The notes under the pieces are model-generated. The model was not told the origin of the DNA. It worked only from the letters and a program-made list of their open reading frames with translations, and made no database searches. 64,000 nucleotides of DNA, taken from Haliotis rubra (lineage: Eukaryota). The stretch lies in NCBI RefSeq assembly GCF_003918875.1, contig NW_025765603.1, positions 682,001-746,000 of the forward strand, written 5' to 3'. How positions within the stretch are numbered: the stretch's first letter is position 1; the number at the start of each line of letters is the position of its first letter. Below are positions 1-18,444 of the stretch, one piece after another. The translations under genes and the position numbers were made by a program.

Positions 1-3000
1 AACATACCGTGTTTGCTGCTGTAAGTCTCGGTTACCAAATCCAAGCAATATTACGACGGAATGTAAATACTCGCGTGTCGACCAGGTGAACCAGTGATTG
101 TGTTATAAGCCAGGTTCCAAGACGAAGTAAGACTACCTTTCCACGCAACCATCCAGGTCAACGAGACTTATGACCAATTCCATTCAGTCACCTCGTACAT
201 GAAAATCATCGAGTCTGGACTGAACAATCCAGTGATTGATGTTGTAAGCACGATACACGCCGTCGGGAGCCGTGGACGCCACCAACCAAAGTCACCGAGC
301 CTTGTCAGCCAATCAGTTACGAGCATCAATAGCCGGAATCTCCTTTGAGTCGGCCAGCCAGGTATAGCATATAGAGAAACGTCACCACTGAGGGCTGTCC
401 CTACTTCACTCGTCCTAAAAACTATTGCGAGAAAACAGCACAGTGGACGAAATAAAATGTTGAGATATAAATACAAGTGATAAAATACTGTTCTTTAGTC
501 GACCACCAAACAGAGGTTTACGAAATACTTTAAATGGAAGCACCAATGTCCAGGTAGATGCATGTTGATAACCTCAATGTAGGCAACGATTCAAGATGAT
601 GTCCTGGTGGAAGTTTTCTCGACAAAAATGGTCACAAAGTCTCAAACATTTTACGGAAGACATCTGGAGGCTATGAGCAGATTTTACACATCAATGCTGT
701 CCGATGCAATTCCCTATTTTGACCTTCACCATATGACCCCTATGTATTTTCGCAGCCAATTCGCAAACCAACTTTAACGAACTCCAAAGGAACCAAAAAC
801 AGTTTCTTACTATCCGAATAAGCACGAGGGTAACAACTCTTCAGTTATAACAAACTATACACCCGTGCTTTAATTAAGCACCACCCCATTTTGAAAATAA
901 GATGTGATGCTACAGAAACGTTTGGGTATAGCCATCAATTTAATCACCCTGTAGTTAAAGAGGCTTTATCCACTGACAGTTTTACAAATACCATAACCTA
1001 TTCTATTCTTTATGAAAGAATATGTTGATGAAAATGTGATGGGACTGAATTTGTACCCCAAATAACTATTCCTCTCCTGCTCAAACTACACAATTGAATT
1101 AAGTTTGGACTAAAATAACAATTCTGTTATATGCCAAGATGACATTTACACATCAAGTAAGCTTTAATTATGCATAATCAGGAAGAACCCGAATGTCGAA
1201 GATTCAGACCTTTTTCCAACAATTCAGACTGCTAATTGATAAAAACAGAAAAATGGGCAAATTAATAAGATTTTGGAATAATTTTTTTATGATTTTTTTC
1301 CGTCAGTATATTCAGGATGGATAACATTACAGATGACAAGAGTCTGAAGACTGACTGACTGAGTTAAGTTTTACGCCGCTTTTAGAAATATTCCAGCAAT
1401 ATCACGGCGGAGTGTCTGAAGAAGAAATACCAGCCTTCATAGTGGGATGTTGTATAAAATTATACTGGTGAAAAAAATCATTTTTGATTGAATGCACGCG
1501 AAATGCTGATGTAATTTATAAGATATGACTGTAAAACCTAAGTTTTTGCTGTGCAAAATATAAGTGTATATATTTACGTACTTTTGTATATAAGCATGAA
1601 TAATTATATATATTTTTTGCAAGCTATATATTTGTATTACACCCAGAAAGCGAAATAAAGAATGGTGATTCATACAAGACCAGATGTCTCGAGCTGCTTT
1701 ACGGCCGTCAACGCCGGATTAAGAACAAATAGGTTCGACTCCAAAATTCACTCAATTATAACTATTATGGTAATCTCCATAGGCCTTGGAGAATCACACA
1801 AGATTTGAATCGTAGGTTAACGTGCGAGGTATCCTCGTGGATGGCAGAAGGAACTGCTTCTACTGTTGGTCAGTGGTATTGGTCTGTATACAGGGAATCG
1901 AACCCTTAATCAGACCAATCTCAAAGGAGATTCCGGCTATTGGTCTGTATACAGGGAATCGAACCCTTAATCAAGACTCATTGAGTCTTTTAGCTAAACC
2001 TATACCCAAAGATAGAAATGTAACCCAACAGATGAAGTAGGTGGAATGTAAAATGTTTATTTCACGCATTATGCTGTATTTCTTCTGGAGAAAACCGAGA
2101 AAATACCTGTATACAAATACATACATACAAAAACAGGCCGGGGGTTGCCTAGTGGTTAAAGCGTTGGCTCGTCACGCCGAAGACCCGGGTTCGATTCCCC
2201 ACATGGGTACAATGTGTGAAACCCATTTCTGGTGTTCCCCGCCGCAATGTTGCTGGAATATTGCTTAAAACGGCATTAAACCATACTCACTCACTCAAAG
2301 CCAGGCCAAGTCCGTTGGCTTTTTGATACACGCATCTCTGTTGCAAACACAAAACACAAGCATCACCATATTGGGCCACCCATTGATATTCTGGGGAGAC
2401 TATGGAACTCCACCATACTGGGAAAAATATTTTACGTCATGTTTTACAAAAACATATTCTGAATATGCTGAACGTTTCGGAAAGAAGATTAAAAAAAACA
2501 GATAATGTTTGGCTTCGGCTTTCAGATACAATAACAAAACAATGATTATTTTGTATCATGTTTTAGAAAAATAATGTCTTAGAAATGACTGTTAAACAAA
2601 ATTACGAAAGAAATGAACGTTTTTGGCTTCTGATTTCCTGCGTAATTACAACATGCATTTTGTTTTCTACAAAACTGCAAGTGTAACTTGAAGGGTCGGT
2701 CACATGCATCCTCACAATCATGTTAACCCTTCGTATCGCTTCGTATGTATACATATTTTCATTGTCGAATTGCAAGTCTGCCAATTTCTGAAAATCGGCT
2801 CCTGTACGAATGATTCAAGACATGCGATCTTAGATTCTTCCCGTCGATCACTTACCTCCACATTCGCAGTCAAACGTCTACTCTCTCGGGACCGGGACAC
2901 AAATGGACAGATTTTTAAAAAAGATACATATCTCAAGACGTCGATTAATACTGACCAAAAAGTGATCTTCTTGCAGAATTGTCAGAAAATATAACTCGGA

Positions 3001-3261
3001 ATTTGTCTTCCAGAGAGATATATAAACATATATTGTCTGTACATGAGTGAGAGGAATGGATGGATCATAGCCACTAAACCTTCAAATATCAACCAATCAG
3101 TATTTTTATTCAAGCATGAAGGCAACTGAGTCCATATACATTAATATATACAACAAACGCAACAGAGGTATGAATATACATGTACGTCAACATATGTGTA
3201 CTATTTGTTTAAATAAGTTTCCTAAAGTTAAGTATATTTGCAGTTAGGTTTTCAGGTATAA

Positions 3262-3422
3262 GGGGCGGTGGGGTAGCCTAGTGGTTAAAGCGTTCGCTCA
3301 TCACGCCGAAGACCCGGGTTCGATTCCCCACATAGGTACAATGTGTGAAGCCAATTTCTGGTGTCCCCCGCCGTGATATTGCTGGAATATTGCTAAAAGC
3401 GGCGTAAAACCATACTCACTCA
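3262..3422 (+). mobile_element. tRNA-derived SINE family A (~165 bp), representative full copy
   Basis: A box TAGCCTAGTGG, B box GGTTCGATTCC, (CACT)n tail, TSD TTCAGGTATAA. Other approximate copies: 2136-2296+, 6030-6186-, 6548-6697-, 11753-11918-, 14421-14580-, 15470-15634-, 15638-15812-, 24980-25144+, 26611-26783+, 35719-35885-, 35900-36062-, 42420-42770+, 44340-44510+, 50912-51035+, 51608-51772-, 52274-52451+. Confidence 0.9.
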
Positions 3423-3439
3423 TTCAGGTATAATACATT

Positions 3440-4735
3440 TCCTTGTAATTTCATTACAAAGTGGGGAAAAAAGCCTGCTTGATTTTCTGATATTTTATAC
3501 ATTATATTTGCCCTATGTGTTAAACGTTTATTTAATATACTGGTATATAATTTACTTTAGATACTTAATAATGAATTGCCTCTGTAATTGTTTTGATTTG
3601 AACGCTCCTCTTTTTGTGTAAACTAATAAAAGTCGTTTTACTCCACGATTCTGGGGGACTGTCACTATCAAAATGATTATTGAATATAGCGAGAAGAAAA
3701 GGCATTACGATATTCTCCGATGATTTTATCATTTCTGTTAACACCAGGTGATTTTTCCATCCTTCAGGCCTTTTATAGCTTTCCGAATTTCGTCTTCCCT
3801 ACTATGACATTCTAGTATTTGTTTATCAACATTCTTATTCGATAGCTGTAGGCACCTTTAATTCCGTATCCTGTTCAGGAAAGTTAGGATAATGAATTGT
3901 TTTGAAAAGATAATACCAAGTTTCATCGAAAATATATTCAGATTAGGTAGTTTTTTCGACTCCTTCCAGAATAATTTAGATTTCTAATCTAATTAAGTAC
4001 ACCTTTCTAGATGTATTTTGTTCACATTTTTCCCAGTTTCTGCATACTTTTGAGTTGACAATATCTATTTTTATAAACTGTATTTCCGTCATTCGTAAGG
4101 GCTTAAGGCTTTTCCTTGTTTGTAACTTTGACCAGTGACATTCGCAACCATACACATATTTAAGTTTAATTTGGGAGATTCTTTTCTTTCTCATACATTT
4201 TGCGGCATCTGATATGTAGTCGAAATATGACAAATATATCTGAACAGTGTGTCTGTTAACATTCGTGATATGTTTCTGGTCCACTGAAGTGATGTTCATG
4301 AAAGACTTTACATTTAAGCCGCGATGTCAGTTTCCTCCATTCTATTACGTTCTTAATGTTAAGTTTAAAGCCGAGAATTATTAGTATATGTCTGCTTTAT
4401 CACATACCCTAAAGCTATCAAAGTATTTCAAGAAATTTTTGGGAGGAAATCTTATGATAATTAACACAACAGCTTTGTTCAGAAATGTGAAGTGACCTTT
4501 ATCATCGCCTTTCATGTTAACTATGAACAGATTGAAAAAGATGCAAAAATTTAAAAAGTAATCCCAAAATCTATTTAAAACACTATCTTGAGTAAATCGA
4601 ACACATAAAGGTACTGGCTCATCTTCAGGAAAGTAATTTTTGCATCCATCAGGTGGTATATTGCGACCTCCAACACGACCATTGAAATCTCCCAAAATAT
4701 ATACATCGCAATCAGTCACATAGTGCGGGTTATTA
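3440..4735 (-). mobile_element. Degenerate LINE ORF2 fragment (AP-endonuclease end to start of RT)
   Basis: VYILGDFNGRVG...LNFC...IVN...GHFTF endonuclease motifs in the C-terminal part of ORF 4381..5217; frameshifts and stops downstream. Confidence 0.75.
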
Positions 4736-5540
4736 AGCTGGTGATCCGAGAACATAAAGCTGGTGATCCGAGCACTTGAAGCTGGCGATCCGAGAACATG
4801 CAGCTGGTGATCCGAGAACATAAAGCTGGTGATCCGAGCACTTGAAGCTGGCGATCCGTGAACATGCAGCTGGTGATCCGAGAACTTGAGAAGCTGGTGA
4901 TCGCAGAAGGTGAAACTGGTGATACGAGAACACGAAGCTGGTGATCCGTGACATGACACTGGTTTTCCGAGAACATGAAGCAGGTGATCCGATAATATAA
5001 AGAAGATGATCCGAGAACATGAAACTGGTGATCCGAGAAGATGAAACTGGTGATCCGAGAACATGAAGCAGGTGATCCGATAACATGAAGCTGGTGATCC
5101 GGGAACTTGAAGATGGTGATCCAAGAACACGAAGCTGGTGATCCGAGAACATGAAGATGGTGATCCGAGAACATGAAGATGGTGATCAGGAACACGAAGC
5201 TGGCGATCCGAGAACATGAAGATGGTGATTCAAGAACACGAAGCTGGTGATGCGAGAACATGAAGATGGTGATCCGGGAACATGAAGCTGGTGATCCGAG
5301 AACACGAAGCTGGTGATCCGAGAACAGGAAGATGGTGATCCGGGAACACGAATCTGGTGATCCGAGAACATGAAGATGGTGTTTCAAGGACACGAAGCTG
5401 GTGATGCGAGAACATGAAGATGATGATCCGGGAACATGGAGCTGGTGATCCGAGAACACGAATCTGGTGATCCGAGAACATGATGATGGTGATCGGCGAA
5501 CATGAAGCTGGTGACCCCAGAATTTGAAGACGGTGATCCC
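4736..5540. repeat. 22-bp minisatellite (GAAGCTGGTGATCCGAGAACAT), ~36 copies, just 3' of the channel stop codon
   Basis: Visible periodicity; produces spurious repetitive ORFs. Confidence 0.95.
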
Positions 5541-5560
5541 AAAATGTGAAACTCTAAAGT

Positions 5561-5670
5561 TCAGCGTTTGTTTGAAAGCCTTATTGCTTGAAATATGATG
5601 AGGTCTAAGATTTCCACGATTGTGAGGACACTGGCTCCGATGAAGAGTCCCATAGATCCCCCGATGTCAC
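5561..5670 (-). CDS. DEG/ENaC exon 10 (TM2 with GAS selectivity belt, stop)
   Basis: taccag| CDIGGSMGLFIGASVLTIVEILDLIIFQAIRLSNKR*. Confidence 0.95.
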
Positions 5671-8600
5671 CTGGTACAAGAGTAAGTGTTTGAGTGAGTG
5701 AGTGGGTGAGTTTTAGCATTATAGCAATAGCACTTTTAGCAATTTTACAGCAATATCATGGCGGTGGGGGATGACAAGCGGAACAAATGATATACCAAGA
5801 CGGACAAGGTAAATTAGAGGTGAAAATAGTATGAATGGAACACTGAAAATTAGTGATGAAATATCTATAATATCTGCTTTTATTAGAAACCCAAACGCAG
5901 TAAACTACAAACCCAAAGGGACCAGTACGTTTACTTCCATATATCCTTCCGTCGTTCGTTAAACGCACTTCGGCTAAAATATACTACACGTTACCATGGA
6001 AACGTAGCTAATTGTACATCTAAACTGAATGAGGGAGGTTTTACACCGCTTTTAGCAATATTCCAGCAATATCATGGCGGGGGACACCAGAAATGGGCTT
6101 CACACTTTGAACTCATGTGGGGAATCGAACCAGGGTCTTCGGCGTGACGAGCCAACGCTTTAACCGATAGGCTACACCACCGCCTCTGAAGCTGGATACA
6201 GATAGTCACAGTCTGCTGGATGTAAGATTTGTATGTTGGCTGCTTGACGCTGTATCATAATGGCCGCCTGTAATTGATCGAATCTAGGTCGGACAGGCCA
6301 GTGATATTTTTAGCAACGTTCAGCACCGTTGAGATATGATCCTCGTAATCAACACAGTCACTGAGTAACCAACCGATCCACAGAGACAATCATGTCTTGA
6401 TGGGAACCTAATCCGAATACCCACAGGACAAGTACTCACAGAACAGCGCAAACACGTCATAGGCAATTTGTTGAGTGTGTTTCTCATAGCTGAGTTGGCG
6501 GAAATAAACGTCCAACTTCAAGAAGTTTTCCCTGAAAAGAAACAGTTGTGAGTGAGTGAGTATGGTTTTACGCCGCTTTTAGCTGTATTCCAGCAATATC
6601 ACGGCGGGGGACACCAGAAATGGACTTCACACATTTTATCCATGTAGGGAATCGAACCCGAGCCAACGCTGTAGCCACCAGGCTACAACACCGCCCTATA
6701 TAAAGAAAGTAAAATGCAGAGACAGCTTTATGTGTGTGCATATTGAATATATCAGATTTGAATATATGTAAGAGAATACAACAGGTGTTAAATGAATATT
6801 TGTTGTGTAACATTGAAATAATACAGATACCATTGTATACGAATGTTTCAAGACGTCAGAACAATAATCGTATATATAAGCATATTGTGTGGACTATTAG
6901 CTTCCAAGAAGCATGGTTTTCAACAGACGGTAATCTTTCTCCACGGCATGGCATTACAAAGTATGATCGACTAATCTTACACTCATTTAGTTTAGTTCAA
7001 AAATTATTATAAAGGTCATTTCTTGCTAGATCATTCCCCAGCGGAATATACAAACAATCCGTTATTTAGTGAAGCAAGGAACAGATAGACTGTACCTTAT
7101 ATCCTGATCTCTTGATGGCAATAAAAAAGACAAGCATATAGTTAGTTGGGAGATAGAGAGTGTTGTGCAGTGGAAAATAAAACGATTGTGCAGAGCTATG
7201 CAAATTAATCTGAAAACCTATCAACTAAAATTTTGATCTTACCTTTTGGCCTAAAACAAGGAACTAAACGTGACAACTATTATAAGTGAGAAAACTATAG
7301 ATTTTACAAAGAACTAAACGTGATTCTCTTAAGTAATTCTAAATGAACTTTGAAATGAAATGACCCGCTAAATACCACTAATTGCCTAACCCTTAAACAT
7401 ACTAATGCAAGTTCAACAATCTAACGCCACAATAGCCAATTGAACCTACACATCTAACATCTAAGTCATTCGTAGTCTAAATGCCTAAACACGAACTGGA
7501 ACGAATGGCAGAAAGGAGCGAATGCCTATTCGTTTTTTCCGTGCAACATCTCCAGGTGTGTTCAAGCGAGCAGTTTTAGTGATAAAAACCAAAATGCCTT
7601 CAGAACAGAGAGCTATATTTAATCTCTAAAAAAACCAAAAAAACATTTTCAATAGAAATGTGCAATGAACAAATGATCACTTATTCGTGTTTCCTTATTT
7701 GATGGAAAGTTATTTAAGGCCATTGTTGACATCGTTGAGAAAAGGTATTAATATCTGTTCCGTTATCGTCCGACACATTCGTATTGTTAATATTCATCTG
7801 TATTGCTCATTATACAAAACAACAGAGATCGCCCTGTTTAAAATAAACAGCACACCCTGAAACACTGTCATCAGAATGTTCCATGGCCTACACAATTATC
7901 TATCCGGTGCAAACATTCAGTCAGGTGAATCAGAGTGTCTAGTGCAATATGGTTCCTTCAACTCTCTCACCGTTTTTCCTCAATCTCACATGAACATAAG
8001 CTAAATTCATTATTGTAATAATATTGAACACATTAGAATATACGTAGTCGTGGTTCCCTACAATCTTTACAATCTGCAGGCCGGGTTCATAGCTAAGAAG
8101 GAGGCACTTGGTGTCATAGCATTCTGTTTTAGAGAGAGAAAGATAAAAAAGAGAGTGATAGAGAGAGCGAGAGTGTGAGAGAGAGAGGGAGAGAGAGTGA
8201 GGGGGTTAGAGTGTGTGTATGTGAGAGTGAGAGGGGGAGAGCGAGACTGAGGGGAAGAGTGTGTGAAGGAGGGAGGAGAGAGAGGGAGAGAGGTGTATAT
8301 GAGAGAGGAGTGGGGGAGAGCGAGAGTGAGGGAGAGAGTGTGTGTATGTGAGAGAGTGAGGGGAGAGCGAGAGAGGGAGAGTGTGTGTATGTGAGAGAGT
8401 GAGGGGGAGAGCGAGAGAGAGAGGGAGAGAGTGTGTGTATGTGAGAGAGTGAGGGGGAGAGCGAGAGTGAGGGGGAGAGAGTGTGTGTATGTGAGAGAGT
8501 GCAATATGGTTCCTTCAACTCTCTCACCGTTTTTCCTCAATCTCACATGAACATAAGCTAAATTCATTATTGTAATAATATTGAACACATTAGAATATAC

Positions 8601-11600
8601 GTAGTCGTGGTTCCCTACAATCTTTACAATCTGCAGGCCGGGTTCATAGCTAAGAAGGAGGCACTTGGTGTCATAGCATTCTGTTTTAGAGAGAGAAAGA
8701 TAAAAAAGAGAGTGATAGAGAGAGCGAGAGTGTGAGAGAGAGAGGGGGAGAGAGTGAGGGGGTTAGAGTGTGTGTATGTGAGAGTGAGAGGGGGAGAGCG
8801 AGACTGAGGGGAAGAGTGTGTGAAGGGAAGGGAGAGTGAGAGAGAGAGAGAGTGTGTATGTGAGAGAGTGAGGGGAGAGAGAGTGAGGGGGAGAGTGTGT
8901 GTGTATGTGAGAGTGAGGGAAGAGAGAGAGGAGAGAGGTGTGTGTATGTGAGAAGAGTGAGGGGAGGCGAGAGAGAGAGGAGAGTGTGTGTATGTGAGAG
9001 AGTGAGGGGAGAGAGAGAGGGAGGGGTGTGTGTGAAGGGAGGGAGAGCGAGTGAGAGAGAGCGAAAGAGAGAGTGAGAGGGGAGAGAGAGAGAGAGAGAG
9101 AGTATGGAGAGAGTGAGGGGGGAGAGCGAGAGTGAGGGGGAGAGTGTGTGAAGGGAGGGGAGAGCGAGTGAGAGACAGAGAGTGAGAGGGGGAGAGAGTG
9201 AGTTAGAGAGAGAGTGAGAAATATATCAAACATTATCCACTTACTTGACAAACGTTGAATCAACGTGACTACTGGCGTAGAACTCGTCCATATGATCGGT
9301 GAGACTCTCAAGACTCCGCAGCAACGTCTCATCTTTGTTATCGAACCCACACTGGACGTCAATCATGTCTCGATGGTCGAGAAAGCTGTCCTTGATCTCC
9401 CGAGTTACCTCCGAGCTGTTTCTCAAGTACCTGCTAATGTCCATGTACCTCCAGTAAGGCATAAGGTCCACCTGCTTCAAGGTGAAGTTCCACATCTCTT
9501 GACTAACCACTGAAAGCTTCTCCCAGCTGTCGTAAACATTCTGTCCTCTATTCCTGACAGTTGCGAAGAACACATTTAAACTGTTGACATTATTCTGAAA
9601 AGTTTTAGATCTGAAGAAGTGTGACGCAACCTCAAGGCTAATATTCCCATAGGTCAAATAGTCCTCACACAAACGTTTTCCTTTCTGAACATCCTCTAAG
9701 GACAATAGGATGCTTTCTATTGCATCTCCTACGATGCCCAGATACTTTAACGTAACGCCATGTGCCTTTTTAAAGTCCTTTTTAATGTGAGTGAAATCCT
9801 GCTCCCTCTTATCTAACTGTATAATCATCCATTGTATAAAATCATAAAAGAAGTGGCTTTTACTTTGCAAAAACTGTCTGCACTTGTCTAGAAAATGTAC
9901 GTTAGCAAAATGTAATAAAGTGGTATTTATGGTTCCATTCATAAACGCTGACGCAGCAAGATTTTCGTATTCTTCCATCCAGTAAATCATTTCCTTGATA
10001 TCAGTCTCAAGCTGATTTGTACGCCTTCTGACAATCTCGGACCTATGAAATGCCTGATGAATCAGCTCCTTCGGAATCAGAAGGTAGCTGTATTCCCGAC
10101 TGAACTTTCTGAACCTGTAGTTAAAAACTGGCGTTCCATTGAGGTAGCTTGATAACAGCTGGGTGTGGTTTTGTATTGTTCTTTTGGCCATGTCTATCCT
10201 TGCTTCAAGCTGGTTCTTGACCATGATGAAGAGCATCTTCCTCACTGAGGTATCGCTGATCTCTGGATCAGCCAGTTGCTCAATTTTCCTTTCAACACTG
10301 AAGGTGAACTCCTGAACTCCATGTGCTATCACAGAGTAGGTTCGCTCGTTCATGGCATCTCTTGCCCGAGCAAGGTCCTTCAGATGAATGTAGTTCTGGT
10401 ACTGGAAATACATATACGTCTCATTCCAGTTCCATAAGAAGTCCTCGGAGATATTCAACAGTTGCTTTCTCTGTTCGTTGATCTTGACCTTTAGTTGATC
10501 CAAAACCACGTGTCTTAACACCTTGAAGTTTTGGTCCAAGGTTTGTAAGAGTGTTCGAAGTTCTTCAGCTTTGTTGATTTGAAGACGATGGGTGATGTCT
10601 CTGGCGTTCTGGTATTTCATTTTCAGGGCTGATCTGTTTGTGTTGCTGAGGAAACGGTCGATGACGAAGGTGGAGGTCGTGGCGTATGATACGGTTGCAT
10701 CAAAGAGTGTGTAGTTGCATGGGACAGGACAGTGACAGTTCTGTTGCACAGACTCTCGGATCTCCACTGTCAAAAATCAATTGAACGATTCAGTTGTTAA
10801 CCAAATATACCCCGTATGTCTCCTTCGCTCAATATGATTTGTCCTAGTCAGAGGTTCTTTTATATGTATGTACGTGTGTGTGTGTGCGTGTGTGTGGGTG
10901 CGTGTGCGTGTGCATGTGCGTGCGTGTGTGTGCTTTACAGATGTGAAATAGGCAAAATGGGACAGTTTCTCAGCCTAAGTAAACTTAGGCTCAGTATCAT
11001 TCGTTACACTGGTATATACTGAGTTTAACAAACCCTAGTAGAAAGAAGAACACAGCTTACGAAATCGCGATAGTTTTACATTTGTACTCTAACGATTCTG
11101 AATGCCATTTTCAGCACGATCGCTCCCGAGTGATACACATCTGTGAAGCTGTGTTCTGATTGGTCAATTCAAAAGGTTAGCTGACGCAACCTCCTACTAG
11201 GGTTTGTTGGACTCGGTATAGCGGTGTAACGAATAATACTGAGCCTAAATTTACTTAGACTCGGCAGTTTCTTTTAGTAATTAATGCATTGATTTCTCAT
11301 AATCCACCACATCTGTATATATGCGCCACTGCTGAAGTACGAAAAGCTGTTTCTAACAGAACACAATGGAGCCTTACCCGCAAAAGGCTTGTAACAACCG
11401 TAGTAATCCCCTAGAGTGCAGAGTGGAATGTCATCTGAAATTACACGGTCATAATGAACATTAAAAACGTGTAATACATGTCCCCGAGAATGAGGGGAAG
11501 CTGGTTTACGCCTTCTTGTAGCAGAATTCCAACAACATCAGCGGAGAACACCCGAAATGGATTCGTCCCCTTGTACCAAGGTTGAATAAGAACCCTGGTA

Positions 11601-14600
11601 AGCTAACACCTTAACCCCTACGCTTCACCACAAGGTCCAAAGGGTCTAGATTTGTTTTTTTCCCATAAACATGTTTCTTAATATGAATAAACTGATTGAA
11701 ATTAAATCACATGCAAAACTTCAGAACGTAAGCCTGTGCTTACCTAATAGCTTGACTGACTTAGTTTGGTTTTACGCCGCTTTTAGCAATATTCCAATAA
11801 CATCACGGCGGGGGACACCAGAAATGGGCTTCACACATTGTACCTATGTGGGGATTCGAACCCGGGCCTTCGGCGTGACGAGCCAACGCTTTAACCATTA
11901 GGCTACCCCACCGCCCCCTAATAGCTTGACCATTTACAAATGATCTATAGATATCTGGCGGCTCAACCCTGGTCTCATATTGAAACAAGCTACACACCCT
12001 AGAATGAATATGGTATCGCCCCCCTACCTTCCGTTTCCGGCATGTAGAAGAGCCGACAGCCACACCTTTGGGAAATTTGCACCATGGAACATTCCACTTG
12101 ACATGTCTCGATTGAGTAGTGAGGGAAGTACTTCAGGCTAGGGCACTGACATTCTCCGTGTGGTTTAGGAAGATTATTAATCTACAACAAAAAATATTAG
12201 ATCATAAGGTGATTATAAAGAGCCGTAGGATTGTATTACGAACGTCCGGCACACTCCGTTTATGGCCTGTCCAGTCGTCCAGTCGTCCAGTCGTCCAGTG
12301 TGTCTCTATTTTTCGTGGGTTTGAATCTCAGATTCTGATGGTCGGTTTGCCTGGTCTTTACTTCATCATGGAAATGTTAGAAGTTTCAAGTTACTCGCGT
12401 CTAACACCTGCATGTCTTCCGGGTTTCCTTCGACAATATGGTGGTCCTGGATACGGAAGGTGAAGGGGTTATGTTGCTTGGCAACGATCCGAAATGGTCA
12501 CTTTGAATTGACACGTCGTGTTAGCGTGATAACAAGAGTGTGCTGAACACAAATTGTTTCATGTCTGATAGTTAGATTCGAACGCGCGATGAACTGATCT
12601 TGCATCGTCTGAATGGCGCAACTCTTGAGACTGATTTGCAACAAGCAACAGTTCACTACTCCGTGGTACGTTGCTAAGATACCGAGATGCTGACAGCTTA
12701 CCGAGATGAGCTGCATGCCGACGAATGAATGTGTCCCCGTGGGTAGGGCGATACCGAGCTCCTGCACCTTGGGGAACTGTCTGTGGTCATGGATGAGGAT
12801 CTTGACCCCTGCGGCGTCGTGGGGCCCGGGCATGTACTCGTACTGCTCCACATTGAGCGTCAGGGACAGCCCCGTTCTCAGCTCCTGGACACACAGATCA
12901 GGTCGAAATTAATGAATATGCATTGTTGGTGTGTGTATGTGCTTGTTTCTTTGTTTGCGTACCTATTATCATATAGTTGTATTCCGGCGACATGAAAATA
13001 ATCGCGCCTGTACAAGTGAGTGAGTTTAGTTTTACGCCGCACACAGCAATATCCCAGCTATATGGCGGCGGTCTGTAAATGATCGAATCTGAACCAGAGA
13101 ATCCAGCGATCAACAGCATGAGCAACTGGGATACGATGACGCGTCAACCAATTCATCGAGCTTGACCACCCGATCCCAGTAGTCTTAGCATGGGATACTG
13201 AAGATCAATCCTAGCCCGGATTTTAATCGGTATGTCTGGACAAGACAATTAAGAGGTGAGGTGAGGTGAAATTGGGTTTAACGTCGTGCTTGAGAATATT
13301 TCGCTCATATGACGACGTGCATGCGTGTGTATGTGTATGTGCGGTTGCTTGTACTAGCCCAGACAGCTGGTTTTATAGTGCTAGCCCACTGAGATACCAT
13401 GCCGCAGTGAAGCATGAATACCCCACTCAGACACATTATACTGACTCCGAGCCGACCAGTCCTTGTTGTACCCATTAATACCGAGCGCCAGGCAGGGACC
13501 AAGAAGTACCATATTTTAACGAACCCTCGACCTTCCGCTCTCCGGGCGGACGCTCTAACCACTACACCACGGAGGCGGTCAGATCTTGTTTGAAATGAGG
13601 CAGACAATTAAGAGATAGATATTGTCGGGGTGCACTGACTCCAAGAACCAAATCAACAATCTTGACCACTCGATCCATTCAATTAACTATAACATCCATT
13701 GCTCTGGACCAATTCGAACCGTTGTCCTCACGAGTTACATTAAATTATATTGAACTGCTTCATTGTGACTGACAAGACACAGCATGTTTGCAGCTTGTAA
13801 GTCAACGAGCATGGTTAGTGTGCCAACCAGTAAAACAGTCTAGCCTTGGAGCTGATCTAATTGTCTCCGGATCCTGCTCTTTCTTGGGGACGTAATTATG
13901 CAAATATAATTGCGGTGCCTTAGATGACTGAAACAGGTAGTGGCATGCCATCTGTTCATAAGGTACAAGCAATTTTCCTTTGAATTGAGTAACTGCTTTG
14001 TAAGTGGACATTGACCAACCTGCTTCTGTGACGTGAAGACGGTCTCGGTCAGATGTGTTTTGGTCAGGTAGGTTGAACGAGAAACAGACGCCGTGATCTG
14101 TCATTATCTCAGTGAAGTTGAAGATACCGCAGGGTTCCCCTCGCCACTGACAACTGTGGGAAGGGAATATATAACTATCATACAGGGAGCTATTGTCGGT
14201 GTGTGAGAGAGTATAAAAAGCAGTGAATGTCAACTAATACATCATTAATGTGAAGCTAATGTTCGCCTTTCAAAAGGTCAAAAAATTGTATTTGCTCAAG
14301 TTGCATTGTGAGTGGGTATTATATTCACTGTACACGTGGTATGTGTAGAATGTGAGGTAGAATGTGAGTATGTGTGCGTACGTGCGTGTGTGTGTAGCCT
14401 TAAGTCTTACTATATGATTAAGTGAGTACAATTTTACGCCGCTTTTAGCAATATTCCAGCAATATCACGGCGGGGGACACCAGAAAATGGGCTTTACACA
14501 TTGTACCCATGTGTGGAGTCGAACCCGGGTCTTCGGCGTGACGAGCGGACGCTAAAACCACTAGGCACCCCCACCGCCCGCTGACTATATGACGCCTGTT

Positions 14601-17600
14601 TGTAAATAAACAACTCTGGGCCTGATAATCCAGTGATTAACATCATGAATCTCGATCTACTCAATGGGGATACGATGACATGCATCCCCAAAGTCTCCTG
14701 ATCCATAATCTCGCCTCATAGACCAGCACAGGTTGCTGGGAGGCGTGTGCTTCCCACGGGGTCATGCAGATTGAAGGTCGCGGGTCGAAGGCAATCACCA
14801 CCCGCATAATCGACTCGATGGTATGCGTCTGAAAAATTAAAGATCCTAATCGCCCCAATCGTGTTCGAATCAGGTGCAAGTGTGCAAATGCGATTACCTG
14901 ACGATCATGTCCTCCATTGCATGAGCTGTGCTGGCGTACAGATGCCTCAAGGTCATGTTCGTGGCGTTTCTCCTCTCAAGGTCAAGGACAGACAATCTTC
15001 TGCCTCCAGTAAACATGGCGGTCAAAAATTCATAGTATCCAAGCTCTGCTGCCTTGCTGGCACTGTTTTAATAGAGACCGCTAAATGTTAGATACCGAAC
15101 GCGTTGGTGAGAATCGAGTATCACACATTGTCGTGATAGAATATATATTCAAGTGTCATTACGCGTTTGATTTACATCAGCAATTGCACACGTCATTCTT
15201 TTAAGGGAAGTACGGTACTGAAATAATAAAATAATTTTAAAAAGTAATAAAAGGCGTAACTATGGCACAAAACTCTTGCGCTATGTACCCACCGGAAAGT
15301 ATTCTGGTTGCAGATGCTGATCGTAGGAAATAAGAGAGTTTTGTTGTATTTGACGTTGAGGTTGACAGTGACAGGGTGGTTGTAGTAGTAGATGACGCGT
15401 TCGACAATCTGGTAGCTCATGACGGTAACACACGTCACTGTTAGAAGAAGCCATAGCAGTCTGGAAGAAGAGTGAATGAGTGAGTTTAGTTTTACGCCAC
15501 GTTTAGCAATACTCCAATAGTGTCACGGTGGGGGGACACCAGAAAATGGCTTTACACATTGTACCTATGTGGGGAATCGAACCGTGGTCTTTGGTGTGAA
15601 GAGCCAACGCCTTCACCACTAGACCACTGCCCCGGTCGACTGACTGACTGACTGACTGAGTTTGGTTTTACGCCGCTTTAAGCAATATTCCAGCAACATC
15701 ACGGCGGGGAACACCAGAAATGGGCTTCACACATTGTACCCATGTTGGGATTCGAACCCGGGTCTTCGGCTTGACAAGCTAACGCTTTAACCACTAGGCT
15801 ACCCCAACGCCCCGCCCCGGTCGAGAACCAGAAGAATTTACATGTTGAGCATACGTTACAACTAAGATTACAGACCCGTGAAGACCCGGGTTAGAATATT
15901 GATCTTCGGTAACCTTTGCTTGTCGTAAGAGGCGACTAACGGGATCGGGTGGTCAGACTCGCTGACTTGGTTGACACATGTCATCGGTTCCCAATTGCAC
16001 AGATCGATGCTCATGCTGTTGATCACTGGTCCAGGCTCGATTATTTACAGACCGCCACTATATAGCTGGAATATAGGGTACCGATTCTAGTATACTTTGT
16101 GGGGAATAGAATCTTATCCGCAAAGTCTGAGAGAAAGTACAATATATATTATATCCAAATAACACAATCCGCCATAGACTGGTGCCAGCAGCCAGCAATA
16201 ATAATATGCATATACATAAAAGTATAATTCTCAAGCTCAAGGGTCGAGGCGAGACCTTCCCACGAAGGTGGCTTTGTGAGGTGTTATGTGTTATGTGATA
16301 TGTGATATATGATGTGTGATATATGATATGTGATATGTGATAAATATGATAAAGAAAGAAAACGCTTGTCCACAAATAAGGTCCTATACCTTATTGAAAG
16401 TTGCATTCGATGCTATAACTAGTCAATCAGTTTTCTAGAAAGGTAAATCATTACACTGGCATTCCAGACAACGAACATTTGCTGAAACACAATGTTGAGA
16501 ACTTCTAAAGGATCTTAACAGAAACATAAACATGAGATTGTTTCAAGATGTTTGAAGGAAGTATCCCTTTGTAACATATATTTTAACTGCAAATTTAACA
16601 TAGGATATAAGCAATAACACCAGATATTACTTACGACTACTTGGGTTACCAGTCCCTATTTGAAGAAGTCATTATTCGACGATGCCGTATTGGCCATTGA
16701 AGATACATACATGAATATTTGTAGGAATGTTAGGGCCATCAATTGTGTCTTCCTAGTGATGAGAGAATNNNNNNNNNNNNNNNNNNNNNNNNNNNNNNNN
16801 NNNNNNNNNNNNNNNNNNNNNNNNNNNNNNNNNNNNNNNNNNNNNNNNNNNNNNNNNNNNNNNNNNNNNNNNNNNNNNNNNNNNNNNNNNNNNNNNNNNN
16901 NGGGAGGAGAGAGTGGGGGGAGGGAGACAGAGAGGAGGGAGAGAGAGAGGGGGAGCGCGAGACAGAGGGGAAGGAGAGCGAGAGGGAGAGAGAGAGACAG
17001 TGGGAGAGGGAGAGTTATCAGTCTATGCGCTAGTTACCCCATGACATCCTCCCTGACACTGACATGGTTGTGAGCTGTGGAATGTCATAACTTCATTCAT
17101 CGATGCAGTGTTTTCATTAAGAACGCTTCGCGAAAGCAACAAGAAAGCTGTCCTGTCAATTGTCACGATTTTGACATTTGTCAGGCGCCTTGCAGAAAAA
17201 GCCACACAAAATGCATACCAAGGATACGTTATGAACACTTCTCATAAAACCATACTTCCACCCTGATGTTGGGCGGGATATGTCCCCAATACATCCTTGT
17301 ACAATGGGTACCAGGTACTCGTGTTCAGCCATCGGACCCAACAGCCTGGGGAACCATTCAACCATTATTGATCCGGTCCATATTCATTATGTACAGCCCC
17401 CCCACGGTGACATTAGTGAATGGAAACCACTTTCACTCGCTCCATTTCTAAATGACACACTATGATACTGGCATCATGCAAGCTCATGTGCAACTGTAAA
17501 AATGGTATGAAAAATATAAAACAGATTTGGGGGGAACACTTTACTTGATACGGCGTAAAACAACATTCCCCACGCTAAACTGTTAGATATCTGTCAGCGC

Positions 17601-18444
17601 AAACGCCTATGAGTTGAATGAAGAAATGTTGAATGAGTTGAAAGAAAGATGAATCTCATCATAGAGAAACAAAAACACCGAGAAACGATATATAAGAGAT
17701 CGTAATCTCTCAAACAAACAAAGAACGCATGCATTAATATACACTATCTGAATCTAAACTGAAGTGCAAGAAATGCTTGTCGTCCTTTACAAAAACATTT
17801 TCAGTGAATGTACGAAATGCACATATCACTCATATTTCTGACTAACAAAACCAATGCTGTTAAACGTTAAATATTGCCAAGAATCTTTGAAGGAAAAATA
17901 TTTTTTTAGTTTAAGCTAATATTTATATCTAACACTAAGAAATATCCTTCCTACTAAACATGTTGCAGTAATCCTACTGGTCTACATAACAATCCGCCAT
18001 CAACTTAACCATTGTCATCAGTCACTTAATGTAAGTACTGTGATTAAACGGAAACAAAACGGTAAAGTTTCAAAAACACAATCGTCGATGCCAAAAATGT
18101 CCAACATCACAATTAAAAAGATCTTCTTTCTACAAAACTTCTACAAAGCCATTGCAACATACAGAACTTCTTCGTATTTTTATATGTCGGCCGTCCGAAA
18201 TGTTGCTACTAGGTATACTAGAGAATAAAGCCCACACTCCTCACCTCCTGATAGGGATCGTTTCTCGCATCCATATGTACCGCAGCCCTTGTAGGGATGT
18301 TGTCTGAGTGAAGTCCACCCAGGCGTCACTGCAACAACACTCAACTACATCCTGGTGGTTTGGGGGATGTTCCGTCCTATTAGAATTATTTTCAAAGGCT
18401 ACCTTGAACCTGCGACCCTTTATGTTGTGGAATAGTCCGGACAT
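5561..18444 (-). CDS. DEG/ENaC family (amiloride-sensitive, ASIC-like) sodium channel subunit, 10 coding exons, ~927 aa once one frameshift is corrected
   Basis: Exons assembled by hand, all GT-AG: 18245-18444, 15293-15460, 14898-15062, 14020-14153, 12702-12884, 12028-12181, 11378-11434, 9245-10766, 6440-6531, 5561-5670. Family motifs: pre-TM1 FTQTTSLQGL, TM1, FPTISICNQN, GVCFSFN, GL.LTLNVEQ, Cys-rich thumb (C..EC...CGC, CPVPC), ENFLKLDVYF, TM2 DIGGSMGLFIGASVLTIVE. Intron phases all match except at exon 5. Confidence 0.93.
6440..6531 (-). CDS. DEG/ENaC exon 9 (beta12, pre-TM2)
   Basis: tttcag| ENFLKLDVYFRQLSYEKHTQQIAYDVFALF |gtgagt. Confidence 0.92.
7941..9220. repeat. ~557-bp tandem duplication with GA/GT-rich low-complexity tracts
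   Basis: Unique segment starting AGTGCAATATGGTTCC at 7941 is repeated at 8498, each followed by a (GA)-rich tract. Confidence 0.9.
9245..10766 (-). CDS. DEG/ENaC exon 8 (end of thumb, beta11 and a giant helical insertion)
   Basis: 1522-nt stop-free exon, essentially ORF 9241..10773; starts VEIRESVQQNCHCPVPC..FDATVSYA; acceptor tgacag, donor AA|GTAAGT. Confidence 0.92.
10971..11262. mobile_element. MITE with ~70-bp terminal inverted repeats in channel intron 7
   Basis: CTAAGTAAACTTAGGCTCAGTATCATTCGTTACAC...AAACCCTAGTAG is mirrored by CTACTAGGGTTT...GTGTAACGAATAATACTGAGCCTAAATTTACTTAG. Confidence 0.75.
11378..11434 (-). CDS. DEG/ENaC exon 7 (thumb)
   Basis: tttcag| DDIPLCTLGDYYGCYKPFA |gtaagg; 57 nt, phase 1-1. 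Confidence 0.88.
11753..11918 (-). mobile_element. SINE family A copy
   Basis: Full length; TSD CCTAATAGCTTGAC. Confidence 0.9.
12028..12181 (-). CDS. DEG/ENaC exon 6 (thumb)
   Basis: ttgtag| INNLPKPHGECQCPSLKYFPHYSIETCQVECSMVQISQRCGCRLFYMPETE |gtaggg. Confidence 0.92.
12702..12884 (-). CDS. DEG/ENaC exon 5 (contains +1 frameshift at 12870-12873)
   Basis: gtccag| (G)AENG[extra G]LSLTLNVEQYEYMPGPHDAAGVKILIHD...GMQLIS |gtaagc. Confidence 0.88.
13255..13580 (-). mobile_element. SINE family C copy in channel intron 4
   Basis: Homologous to 46779-47096; direct repeat AGACAATTAAGAG at 13243 and 13602. Confidence 0.85.
14020..14153 (-). CDS. DEG/ENaC exon 4
   Basis: ccacag| CQWRGEPCGIFNFTEIMTDHGVCFSFN...HVTEAG |gttggt; phase 2-1. 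Confidence 0.92.
14898..15062 (-). CDS. DEG/ENaC exon 3 (short finger region)
   Basis: aaacag| ASKAAELGYYEFLTAMFTGGRRLSVLDLERRNATNMTLRHLYASTAHAMEDMIVS |gtaatc; phase 2-2; this frame is absent from the ORF track. Confidence 0.88.
15293..15460 (-). CDS. DEG/ENaC exon 2 (TM1 and start of palm)
   Basis: ttccag| LLWLLLTVTCVTVMSYQIVERVIYYYNHPVTVNLNVKYNKTLLFPTISICNQNTFR |gtgggt. Confidence 0.92.
16769..16901. other. Assembly gap (133 N) beside a GA-rich tract in channel intron 1
   Basis: N run. Confidence 1.
18245..18444 (-). CDS. DEG/ENaC exon 1 (cytoplasmic N-terminus)
   Basis: GCCATG start with an upstream in-frame TAA; MSGLFHN...DFTQTTSLQGLRYIWMRETIPIRR; donor AG|GTGAG, phase 2. Confidence 0.85.

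What the first reader, a model, noticed from the sequence alone, without database searches (positions are those of the whole stretch)
9245..10680. DEG/ENaC channel with a ~475-residue helical insertion replacing the knuckle domain
Seen: about 475 aa lie between the beta11-like segment (FDATVSYATTS) and the beta12-like segment (ENFLKLDVYF), all in one 1.5-kb stop-free exon. The insert has heptad-like amphipathic stretches (AEELRTLLQTLDQNFKVLRHVVLDQLKVKINEQRKQLLNI), only 3 Cys and at least 8 N-glycosylation sequons. Known: in ASIC1/ENaC the knuckle is only two short helices at the apex of the trimer. Inference: the insert nearly doubles the subunit and could form an extracellular helical bundle or stalk acting as a tether, mechanosensor or ligand-capture domain. 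Similar long channels may exist unannotated in other lophotrochozoans; I know of no functional characterisation.
Basis: partly seen in the sequence, partly recalled or inferred. Interest (0 to 1): 0.85.

Follow-up and report, generated by a model that had tools for sequence, protein, structure and literature searches.

The report
Sodium channel with giant helical insert
An abalone DEG/ENaC sodium-channel gene carries a conserved all-helical domain of about 470 residues at the top of its outer region; the same domain marks a large, unstudied channel subfamily in molluscs, annelids, ribbon worms and brachiopods, and it is already present in public gene models.

Summary
On the minus strand, coding exon 8 (9245-10766) of a ten-exon DEG/ENaC gene is one stop-free exon. 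It places 476 residues between the strand FDATVSYATTS and the strand ENFLKLDVYF, in frame and in splice phase.

The exon is 100% identical to residues 353-860 of the RefSeq model LOC124271849 of Haliotis rubra (931 aa), so the gene is already annotated.

An exhaustive HMMER search found 156 clusters of relatives. Every full-length protein whose name I looked up (850-1050 aa) was from a mollusc, nemertean, annelid or brachiopod, and each one tested has its Pfam ASC domain split at the same point. Insert length is nearly fixed, at 477-489 aa in 29 of 34 full-length members. A 3.8-kb assembled scallop contig, most simply a transcript, carries both channel halves and the insert in one ORF.

AlphaFold2 models the insert confidently (pLDDT 90.8) as an all-alpha rod. 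It looks like two stacked four-helix bundles with helices of 84 and 71 residues. No specific match exists in PDB, Pfam or the ESM Atlas. N-glycosylation sequons are enriched.

Function is untested; my guess is a partner- or matrix-binding stalk. I found no paper describing it.

The parts
9245..10766 (-). Coding exon 8 of the DEG/ENaC gene. It encodes the end of the thumb/beta10 part of the ASC domain plus the whole helical insert.
   Evidence: Splice sites and phase read from the sequence. 100% identical over 508 aa to H. rubra RefSeq LOC124271849 residues 353-860. 87% identical to the H. asinina ortholog.
10672..10704 (-). Palm strand FDATVSYATTS just before the insert.
   Evidence: Motif located. 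Pfam ASC profile positions 354-391 cover exon residues 6-48. AF2 strand 370-382 in the full-length model. Knuckle follows beta10 (PMC9052164).
9245..10671 (-). The 476-residue segment between the two palm strands: an all-alpha insert at the knuckle position.
   Evidence: AF2 with an 81-sequence alignment gives pLDDT 90.8 and pTM 0.80. Helices span 64-147, 173-210, 244-277, 282-352, 388-430 and 478-500. No Pfam family matches. 156 homologous clusters found.
9802..10407 (-). Exon residues about 121-322: inferred membrane-distal four-helix bundle tier of the rod.
   Evidence: VIA alignments to four-helix bundles cover 123-319, 125-322 and 124-322 (Z 11-14). Other alignments cover 69..500, i.e. 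the remaining helices. The assignment to tiers is my inference from these ranges and the helix list.
10339..10368 (-). RARDAMNERT, the best-conserved motif of the insert (family consensus R-x-R-x-A-M-E-E-R-T).
   Evidence: Invariant in the three-way alignment. Highest 20-residue conservation window of the insert, positions 121-140. Consensus.
10162..10170 (-). N-H-T glycosylation sequon at exon residue 200, the conserved one.
   Evidence: A sequon sits at this column in 69 of 81 family sequences.
7096..7110 (-). Candidate 15-nt microexon (adds DQDIR), used by the H. rubra RefSeq model between exon 8 and the next strand exon.
   Evidence: The only match to the back-translated pattern in the window, with AG before and GT after. 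DQDIR is present in P0163. It is absent at this junction from every other member in which the junction could be located (21 proteins).
6440..6531 (-). Exon encoding ENFLKLDVYFRQLSYEKHTQQIAYDVFALF: beta11, the beta11-beta12 linker and beta12.
   Evidence: Sequence and splice sites. Aligns to ASIC2 residues about 400-430. AF2 strand 868-883.
5561..5670 (-). Last coding exon: DIGGSMGLFIGASVLT... This is TM2 with the G-A-S filter, followed by the stop codon.
   Evidence: Pfam ASC profile positions 419-454. Sequence.
11379..18444 (-). Coding exons 1-7: N-terminus, TM1, finger, beta-ball, palm and thumb. Approximate blocks are 18244-18444, about 15290-15441, 14900-15061, 14018-14155, 12699-12875, 12026-12190 and 11379-11438.
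   Evidence: tblastn of the H. asinina ortholog P0003 against the window. Pfam ASC hits on the ORF pieces.

Best explanation
**What is shown.** This is an intact Haliotis rubra DEG/ENaC subunit of the ASIC-related branch. Its knuckle, the small helical cap that follows palm strand beta10 at the top of the trimer, has been expanded by a conserved, autonomously folding, N-glycosylated all-alpha domain of about 470 residues. The domain defines a subfamily found in molluscs, nemerteans, annelids and brachiopods, so it was probably already present in their common ancestor. AlphaFold2 models it with high confidence.

**Inferred from the model.** The domain looks like a rod of two stacked four-helix bundles joined by two very long helices of 84 and 71 residues. 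An 84-residue straight helix would be about 12-13 nm long. Chain entry and exit both lie in the tier next to the channel.

**Inferred mechanism.**
- Beta10 lies at the three-fold axis, so three rods would rise from the apex of the trimer as a stalk or crown.
- The best-conserved motifs lie in what I infer to be the distal tier. I therefore propose that the far end binds a conserved extracellular partner, either matrix or cell-surface material or a soluble ligand.
- Occupancy or pull would then be passed to the knuckle-finger interface and the upper palm. That region forms the peptide pocket in FaNaC and tunes Na+ self-inhibition in ENaC.

No step of this mechanism has been tested.
For: **Gene and exon.**

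**Identity to the H. rubra RefSeq model.**

**DEG/ENaC membership.**
- Pfam ASC E=3e-91, in two stretches broken at profile position about 393.
- phmmer to ASIC2 gives 4.5e-59, with the alignment broken between residues 382 and 852.
- Foldseek of the full model to ASIC1 gives E=2e-20.

**Conservation.**
- 156 clusters at E<=1e-3 and 45 at <=1e-30. Full-length hits of 850-1026 aa carry the match at about residues 360-870.
- Named members come from Haliotis, Patella, Babylonia, Elysia, Batillaria, Pecten, Argopecten, Mytilus, Ruditapes, Mya, Octopus, Argonauta, Lineus, Tubulanus, Capitella, Dimorphilus and Lingula.
- The ASC break point is the same in the mollusc, annelid and brachiopod members tested.
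- Insert length is 477-489 aa in 29 of 34 members, while insert identity falls to 15-30% against 35-50% for the channel core.
- From the differences listed for a 1.4%-diverged abalone contig, dN/dS is roughly 0.3.

**In mRNA.** The Logan contig L003 (3791 nt) has one 957-aa ORF containing both ASC halves and the insert.

**Fold.** pLDDT 90.8 and pTM 0.80, all helices. The same helices appear in the full-length model. Four-helix-bundle alignments cover 123-322 and 69..500 separately.

**Extracellular location.** The insert lies between TM1 and TM2, and sequons are enriched, 9 against 3.4 expected.

**Role of the knuckle in relatives.**
- Alpha6 of the adjacent subunit lines the FMRFamide pocket (PMC11026163).
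- Beta10 lies at the three-fold axis and links to the knuckle.
- Deleting the ENaC alpha-subunit knuckle reduces or abolishes Na+ self-inhibition (PMC9052164).
Against: **Function.** Nothing here bears on function directly.

**Expression in this genome.** No RNA run held this abalone gene. The runs I laid were DNA contigs that cover the introns. The one possible RNA run gave only a 216-nt contig inside the exon.

**Geometry.**
- The full-length model has pTM 0.53, so the orientation of the rod relative to the channel is not established.
- No trimer model could be run.
- I had no coordinates. The two-tier geometry and the distal placement of the conserved motifs rest on helix lists and alignment ranges.

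**The conserved residues** could be a buried salt-bridge network that only stabilises the bundle.

**The knuckle** is described as static during FaNaC gating, which argues against a simple pull-to-open coupling through it.
Confidence: 0.5

Rival explanations
1. The insert is a built-in ligand sensor. The distal four-helix bundle would bind a small molecule or peptide, as bacterial four-helix-bundle chemoreceptor and histidine-kinase sensor domains do. The long helices would relay binding to the channel, making these ligand-gated channels with a new receptor module.
For: VIA-align lists periplasmic four-helix-bundle sensor domains over residues about 117-330: PcaY_PP LBD Z 11.3, Adeh_2942 sensor Z 11.1, Vc1313 LBD Z 10.3, Tsr LBD Z 9.4 and 6db1 Z 9.2. 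The conserved charged motif R-x-R-D-A-M-x-E-R-T and conserved R176/R190 lie in that tier. DEG/ENaCs are often ligand-gated (PMC11026163).
Against: These Z-scores fall inside the range the tool itself says is common for any helical bundle. The top hits are designed bundles at Z 14.2. Foldseek finds nothing below E=0.03. The A2 profile found no real sensor-domain homolog in the PDB sequence search. Bacterial 4HB sensors work as dimers, whereas this channel is a trimer.
Confidence: 0.2
2. The insert has a structural or cell-biological role only. It could be a spacer or glycan-bearing shield, a trimer-assembly or subunit-selection domain, or a targeting/retention signal, with no part in gating.
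For: The domain is a self-contained, confidently folded bundle (pTM 0.80). It evolves faster than the channel core while keeping its length, which is typical of scaffolds. It is heavily sequon-decorated. The knuckle is static during FaNaC gating.
Against: Conserved motifs, some of them polar (RARDAMNERT, G-x-P-I-F-x-Y, and conserved W/Y positions), have persisted across four phyla. That points to more than a spacer. Knuckle changes do alter gating in ENaC.
Confidence: 0.2
3. Most of exon 8 is removed from the main transcript through an internal donor or exon skipping, so the functional channel is of ordinary size. The long form would be a minor isoform or a product of gene prediction.
For: No RNA reads for this abalone gene could be examined. 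RefSeq models are predictions. The H. rubra model also contains a doubtful 15-nt microexon.
Against: The reading frame has stayed open and length-conserved for hundreds of millions of years in 150+ clusters, with dN/dS of about 0.3 between close abalone sequences. A scallop contig, most simply a transcript, carries the insert between both ASC halves in one ORF. In another gastropod assembly the insert is split over about 10 exons that must all be spliced together in frame.
Confidence: 0.05
4. The ORF is a captured transposon or other foreign gene lying in an intron, and it only happens to be in frame.
For: It is a single large exon, no Pfam family covers it, and the surrounding introns are full of SINE-like repeats.
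Against: There are no transposon or PHROG-like hits. Every named homolog is a DEG/ENaC, with the insert at the same ASC profile position wherever that was tested. There is one copy in the window. Splice phase fits on both sides. Repeats laid at huge depth in the DNA runs, but the exon laid at single-copy depth.
Confidence: 0.01

Closest known systems
Vertebrate ASIC1/ASIC2 (PDB 2qts, 6l6p, 9e4a)
   Same: These are the closest solved relatives. phmmer gives E=4.5e-59 to ASIC2 and Foldseek gives E=2e-20, TM about 0.6 by target. They share two TM helices, palm/thumb/finger architecture, the conserved thumb cysteines and the G-A-S filter.
   Different: In ASICs about 25 residues (two short helices) lie between beta10 and beta11. 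Here there are 476 (481 with the microexon). In the three Haliotis orthologs the N-terminal gating motif reads Q-G instead of H-G, and the 'degenerin' position before DIGG is Cys. Proton gating was not tested.
C. elegans DEL-10 (UniProt Q10025)
   Same: NCBI names several family members 'degenerin-like protein del-10', so DEL-10 is their best Swiss-Prot match. Published trees place DEL-10 in the ASIC-related clade, and its activating stimulus is unknown (PMC9822975).
   Different: I could not fetch DEL-10, so whether it holds a homologous insert is untested. No ecdysozoan appeared among the 30 clusters whose names I looked up.
FaNaC (FMRFamide-gated channels of molluscs and annelids; PDB 8on7, 7yvb)
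   Same: These are lophotrochozoan DEG/ENaCs. Their knuckle helix alpha6 of the neighbouring subunit forms part of the ligand pocket, which shows that this corner of the trimer can be a receptor site.
   Different: FaNaC has a normal short knuckle and is a far weaker sequence match (E=1.7e-29 and 1.7e-12). Its specialisation is in the finger, not the knuckle.
Bacterial four-helix-bundle (4HB) and helical bimodular sensor domains of chemoreceptors and histidine kinases
   Same: They are extracytoplasmic, all-alpha, antiparallel bundles built on long helices that run on towards the membrane. VIA Z is 9-11 over residues about 117-330.
   Different: There is no sequence relationship. The scores are in the generic range for helical bundles. 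Those domains are dimeric and sit directly on TM helices, whereas this one is grafted into a beta-sheet domain of a trimer.
MEC-4/MEC-10 touch channel with extracellular matrix partners (from general knowledge)
   Same: It is a DEG/ENaC for which links between the ectodomain and extracellular matrix have been proposed to shape mechanical gating. This is the functional analogy behind the tether idea.
   Different: There the candidate tethers are separate proteins, and the degenerin-specific extra domains lie elsewhere in the ectodomain. No helical rod is known. The comparison was not tested here.
Another H. rubra DEG/ENaC with a Ser-Gly repeat insert in the finger (scan note s1-347339)
   Same: It comes from the same genome and is also a DEG/ENaC ectodomain enlarged by a lineage-specific insert.
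   Different: It is a different gene with a different insert site (finger). That insert is low-complexity and acidic, not a folded helical domain. I did not check it.

Membership tests
DEG/ENaC (Pfam ASC, PF00858) | Significant match to the ASC profile over the whole channel | tested here: met
   P0163, which is identical to the window exon, scores E=3e-91 and 307 bits against a cutoff of 23.6. The match is in two stretches broken at profile position about 393 of 455. The individual window exons also hit ASC.
DEG/ENaC (Pfam ASC, PF00858) | Two transmembrane helices flanking a large ectodomain with the ASIC-type fold | tested here: met
   The AF2 full-length model has helices 64-94 and 891-930. 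Foldseek to ASIC1 chains gives E=2e-20, probability 1.00 and TM about 0.6 by target.
DEG/ENaC (Pfam ASC, PF00858) | G/S-x-S selectivity filter in TM2 and the DIGG pre-TM2 motif | tested here: met
   The last exon reads DIGGSMGLFIGASVLT. GAS or GSS occurs in most family members.
DEG/ENaC (Pfam ASC, PF00858) | N-terminal H-G gating motif | tested here: inconclusive
   The family consensus is T-L-H-G-L. This gene and its two Haliotis orthologs read S-L-Q-G-L, so Gly is kept and His is replaced by Gln. The functional effect is unknown.
DEG/ENaC (Pfam ASC, PF00858) | Trimeric, amiloride-sensitive Na+-selective current | not testable with these tools
   Needs expression and recording.
ASIC proper (proton-gated subfamily) | Activation by extracellular protons, and orthology to deuterostome or spiralian ASICs | not tested
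   ASICs are the best PDB hits and amphioxus ASIC2 is the best short relative. The RefSeq names ('ASIC 4-B-like') rest on similarity only. On my tree the amphioxus ASIC2 outgroup joins by a very long branch.
Long-knuckle DEG/ENaC subfamily (defined here) | A homologous all-alpha insert of about 480 aa between beta10 and beta11, at ASC profile position about 393 | tested here: met
   The window exon hits 156 clusters. Pfam shows the same break point in five members from three phyla. Insert length is 477-489 aa in 29 of 34 members.
Bacterial 4HB / HBM sensor domains | Sequence or clearly above-background structural homology | tested here: not met
   No sequence hit. VIA Z of 9-11 is below the designed bundles at 14.2 and within the tool's stated background for helical proteins. 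Foldseek E>=0.03.
ClyA-type alpha-pore-forming toxins (AhlB, Hbl, Mak) | Elongated bundle with a hydrophobic head, and above-background structural match | tested here: not met
   VIA Z is 9.1-11.2 with rmsd 3.9-5.2 A over about 190-214 residues, which is generic. There is no sequence match.
Transposon-derived or foreign ORF | Match to transposase, RT or other mobile-element proteins, or multiple dispersed copies | tested here: not met
   No such Pfam hit. There is a single copy in the window and single-copy depth in the DNA runs. All named homologs are channels.
Internal tandem repeat domain | Detectable similarity between parts of the insert | tested here: not met
   hhalign between halves and quarters of the family alignment gives probabilities of 0.9-16%.

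The most novel reading that the evidence does not exclude
The rod is a new kind of receptor or tether module built into an ion channel. Three 12-13-nm glycosylated helical rods would form a stalk on the trimer apex. Its conserved distal tier would dock a matrix or cell-surface partner, or a ligand, and gate the pore. That would make it the first DEG/ENaC with an integral extracellular gating tether or sensor. It would be ancestral to Lophotrochozoa and possibly shared with nematode DEL-10, whose stimulus is unknown.
Probability: 0.2. Interest if true: 0.8.

Novelty: new variant of a known kind. Interest (0 to 1): 0.55.

Why it matters
DEG/ENaC channels are gated by very different stimuli (protons, peptides, force, proteases), and these act through the peripheral parts of one shared ectodomain. 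This subfamily adds a whole folded domain, as large as the channel itself, at the apex of the trimer. It has kept that domain's length and several motifs across at least four phyla, yet the domain has no Pfam family, no solved relative and, as far as six literature searches reached, no description.

It gives a concrete object for testing whether a DEG/ENaC can carry its own extracellular tether or sensor. The domain boundaries are clean, so deletion or swap experiments should be straightforward. If C. elegans DEL-10 shares the domain, a genetic model is already available.

For genome annotation, it argues for defining a new domain family. The proteins could then stop being labelled 'uncharacterized' or misleadingly 'ASIC4-like'.

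Tried and rejected
**RNA evidence in this genome.** The look-up of sequencing runs found no run on record as RNA. The four runs I laid were contigs. X2, X3 and X5 cover introns, so they are DNA. X1 ('RNA?' by guess) gave only a 216-nt contig at 9883-10098. There was therefore no splice-junction test for abalone.

**Fetching C. elegans DEL-10.** I wanted to test whether it shares the insert. Two word-indexed searches (alignment A3, full-length P0068) did not return it. The exhaustive search was already spent, so this remains untested.

**Specific fold relatives.** None of these gave a specific match:
- Foldseek against PDB: nothing below E=0.03.
- VIA wide search: generic bundles only.
- ESM Atlas by shape: TM<=0.29 by query.
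- ESM Atlas by features: no usable hit.
- PDB sequence profile search: only low-complexity and helical noise, plus the ASIC5 beta10 piece.

**Internal repeats.** None detected.

**Transposon origin and a second copy in the window.** Both rejected.

**Literature.** Six searches and seven papers read in part. None mentions a long knuckle insert.

**Tree.** The tree is not used to root or date anything. The outgroup branch is very long and several rows sit on long branches.

**Model coordinates.** These were not available to scripts, so I could make no distance or surface calculations.
Full report
**1. What is in the sequence**

The window's minus strand carries a ten-exon DEG/ENaC gene running from 18444 to 5561. 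tblastn with the Haliotis asinina protein XP_067658355.1 (P0003, 926 aa) gives ten colinear blocks at 68-94% identity, and the separate ORF pieces hit Pfam ASC.

Coding exon 8 is 9245-10766.
- It opens after ...ttgacAG and closes before GTAAGT.
- It begins with two bases that complete a Val codon and ends with AA.
- The next conserved exon (6440-6531) opens with G GAA AAC, giving K-E-N-F-L-K-L-D-V-Y-F.
- That exon ends with T, which joins GT of the last exon (5561-5670). The result is C-D-I-G-G-S-M-G-L-F-I-G-A-S-V-L-T followed by a stop.

Frame and splice phase are therefore consistent across the whole large exon. By my arithmetic, 508 stop-free codons at this base composition would occur by chance at about 4e-13.

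Between FDATVSYATTS (10672-10704) and ENFLKLDVYF (6501-6530) lie 476 residues.
- There are three Cys, none conserved in the family.
- There are ten N-x-S/T sequons from residue 44 on. Counting from residue 45 gives nine, against 3.4 expected from shuffles, and 0.45% of shuffles reach nine.
- The sequon at N200 is kept in 69 of 81 relatives.

**2. Whose gene it is**

The exon translation is 100% identical over all 508 residues to residues 353-860 of RefSeq 'uncharacterized protein LOC124271849 [Haliotis rubra]' (P0163, 931 aa). It is 87% identical to H. asinina and 79% to H. rufescens LOC124137693. So the window is blacklip abalone, or something indistinguishable from it here, and the long gene model is already public.

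A 57% paralog exists: H. rubra LOC124271872, whose longest recorded contig has the same length as that of LOC124271849, and a H. cracherodii protein. A third, older paralog is about 32% identical: LOC124253335. Only one copy lies in this window.

**3. A large, conserved subfamily**

I searched the exon with HMMER against 1.84 billion cluster representatives. It found 156 clusters at E<=1e-3, 97 at <=1e-10 and 45 at <=1e-30.

About two dozen hits are 850-1026 aa long with the match at roughly residues 320-890. These are full-length channels with the insert. Many others are single-exon ORFs of 440-560 aa called on unannotated contigs.

I looked up 30 clusters by name, and all are lophotrochozoan (one search adds more nemertean proteins):
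- Gastropods: Haliotis, Patella, Babylonia, Elysia, Batillaria.
- Bivalves: Pecten, Argopecten, Mytilus, Ruditapes, Mya.
- Cephalopods: Octopus, Argonauta.
- Nemerteans: Lineus, Tubulanus.
- Annelids: Capitella, Dimorphilus.
- A brachiopod: Lingula.

Pfam finds ASC in two stretches, with the first ending at profile position 391-394 of 455, in members from molluscs, annelids and a brachiopod. The insertion point is therefore shared.

The segment between the two strands is 477-489 aa in 29 of 34 full-length proteins and 418-541 aa in the rest. Insert identity to the abalone protein falls to 15-30%, against 35-50% for the channel core. The length is held while the sequence drifts.

An ML tree places one annelid, nemertean and brachiopod group (support 96/93) apart from a second nemertean group (97/99). 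This suggests old paralogy. The amphioxus outgroup joins by a very long branch, so I draw no rooting from the tree.

**4. Is the insert really translated?**

I could not test this with abalone RNA. No run is on record as RNA. The runs I laid cover the introns too, so they are DNA. The one possible RNA run gave only a 216-nt contig inside the exon. Four indirect lines agree that it is translated.

(a) The open frame and its length have been conserved across four phyla.

(b) A 1.4%-diverged abalone contig (X2/X3) has 22 listed differences in the exon. Ten are synonymous and twelve are not, over 299 synonymous and 1225 non-synonymous sites. That gives dN/dS of about 0.3. The estimate is rough, because the tool may not list every difference.

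(c) A Logan contig from SRR23580857 (L003, 3791 nt) has one uninterrupted 957-aa ORF. It contains both ASC stretches and the insert, with untranslated flanks on either side. It belongs to the Pecten/Argopecten cluster. This is most simply a spliced mRNA.

(d) In GenBank assembly GCA_019648995.1 the homologous insert is split over about ten exons. These only make sense if they are spliced together.

**5. Where exactly the insert sits**

ENaC work states that the distal end of beta10 links to the knuckle and that the beta10 strands lie at the three-fold axis (PMC9052164). The beta11-beta12 linker is a separate element closer to the membrane (PMC11026163).

The Pfam ASC match continues to exon residue 48, through T-F-V-I-D-R-F-L-S-N.... 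phmmer aligns the last residues of the insert with the ASIC2 helix just before E-N-I-L-V-L-D.

In the full-length model, short helices at 385-394 and 856-865 flank the big helices, between strands 370-382 and 868-883.

I read this as a knuckle expanded from within, not replaced.

**6. Predicted structure**

With an 81-sequence alignment (A2), AlphaFold2 gives mean pLDDT 90.8 and pTM 0.80. Of the 508 residues, 422 score 90 or above. Only the beta10 piece is poorly modelled when taken out of context.

The insert is entirely helical. The main helices are 64-147 (84 residues), 151-165, 173-210, 244-277, 282-352 (71 residues), 354-372, 388-430, 451-468 and 478-500. The same pattern recurs in the 931-residue model, which has pLDDT 82 and pTM 0.53, so the orientation between domains is unreliable. 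The channel part of that model matches ASIC1 (Foldseek E=2e-20).

VIA-align matches fall into two sets:
- Four-helix bundles aligned to residues about 123-322. Examples are 8gl3 (Z 14.2, 175 residues, 2.9 A) and PcaY_PP LBD (Z 11.3).
- Bundles aligned across 69..500. An example is 6z0c (Z 14.2, 198 residues, 3.2 A).

From these ranges and the helix list I infer two stacked four-helix bundles that share the two long helices. The chain's entry and exit lie in the proximal tier, and residues about 121-322 form the distal tier. An 84-residue straight helix is about 12.6 nm long. I had no coordinates, so this geometry is inference.

There is no specific structural or sequence relative:
- Foldseek E>=0.03.
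- Atlas TM<=0.29 by query.
- Atlas by features: none.
- PDB profile search: noise only.
- The VIA scores lie within the tool's stated background for helical proteins.
- No internal repeat.

**7. Conservation map**

Within the insert, the most conserved 20-residue windows are 121-140 (F-Q-Y-Q-N-Y...R-A-R-D-A-M-N) and 201-220. The second contains G211 and the P-V-F-N-Y stretch, and the conserved N200/T202 sequon lies immediately before it.

Other conserved positions are E141, R142, R176, L187, R190, Y208, P232, Y370, W426, Y438-W439 and the exit residues D503 and F506 (consensus). Most of these fall in what I infer to be the distal tier or at the junction between tiers.

**8. Mechanism**

Shown: the insert is a conserved, folded, extracellular domain at the knuckle of an otherwise canonical channel subunit. 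Extracellular placement follows from topology and from sequon enrichment.

Inferred: three rods rise from near the three-fold axis, and the conserved distal tier is a docking or sensing site. Its state would reach the pore machinery through the knuckle-finger interface and the upper palm.

The relevance of that interface comes from relatives. The neighbouring subunit's alpha6 lines the FMRFamide pocket in FaNaC. Knuckle deletion or a mutated hydrophobic patch alters Na+ self-inhibition in ENaC.

Against a simple pull-to-open model, the knuckle is static during FaNaC gating.

I put about 0.95 on the structural and evolutionary statement and about 0.35 on the partner- or tether-binding mechanism. 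The rivals are a ligand sensor (0.2) and a scaffold-only role (0.2). Neither is excluded.

**9. Comparison and novelty**

By every feature I could test, this is a DEG/ENaC. The exception is the H-G motif, which reads Q-G in the three Haliotis orthologs.

It is nearest to ASICs, but I do not file it as an ASIC because proton gating and orthology were not tested.

NCBI's label 'degenerin-like protein del-10' for several members hints that C. elegans DEL-10 may be the nearest named protein. DEL-10's stimulus is unknown, and it gave no currents above control in an acid screen. I could not retrieve DEL-10 to test this.

In six literature searches and seven papers read in part, I found no description of the insert. 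The proteins are public but unstudied, and the domain has no Pfam entry. I therefore class it as a new variant of a known kind, of moderate to good interest.

A scan note on another H. rubra DEG/ENaC with a Ser-Gly insert in the finger (s1-347339) suggests that ectodomain enlargement recurs in this genome. I did not check that note.

Noticed in passing
window 7096-7110 (-): A 15-nt candidate microexon (AG|AGATCAGGATATAAG|GT) would add D-Q-D-I-R between the insert and the ENFLKL strand. The H. rubra RefSeq model uses it. No other family member in which this junction could be located (21 proteins) has extra residues there, so it may be a prediction artefact or a species-specific alternative exon.
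   Followed up: partly
window 5661-5670 and 6440 (-); family alignment A4: The 'degenerin' position just before D-I-G-G is Cys in this gene and in most family members (A-L-L-C-D-I-G-G), where ASICs have Gly. This is a subfamily signature at a gating-critical site.
   Followed up: partly
window about 18290-18310 (-), exon 1: The N-terminal gating motif reads S-L-Q-G-L in the H. rubra, H. asinina and H. rufescens orthologs. It reads T-L-H-G-L in the paralogs and most other members, so the His of the H-G motif is lost in this orthogroup.
   Followed up: partly
L004 8949-22847 (GenBank assembly GCA_019648995.1): The homologous insert is split over about ten exons there. In Haliotis and in contig L001 it is a single exon. 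Either intron loss or intron gain has been extensive within the same domain.
   Followed up: partly
window 11753-11917: A tRNA-like SINE copy in intron 6, between exons 6 and 7, is absent from the otherwise colinear contigs of runs X2/X3, so it is an insertion polymorphism or a species difference. The same element recurs many times in the window (ORF translations containing ...ALARHAEDPGSIPHMG...), and it laid at depths in the millions.
   Followed up: no
window 8050-9240: The intron after exon 8 is CT-rich low-complexity sequence. It contains a duplication of about 557 bp: identical 42-aa ORFs occur at 8050-8178 and 8607-8735.
   Followed up: no
window 16769-16901: A run of 133 N lies in intron 1 of the channel gene. 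I left it untouched.
   Followed up: no
L001 (ENA ERZ25071447 ctg63371) 1520-8142: A metagenome-labelled contig carries a family member, 35% identical in the insert, with the same exon order as the abalone gene. It is evidently animal DNA in a metagenome assembly.
   Followed up: partly
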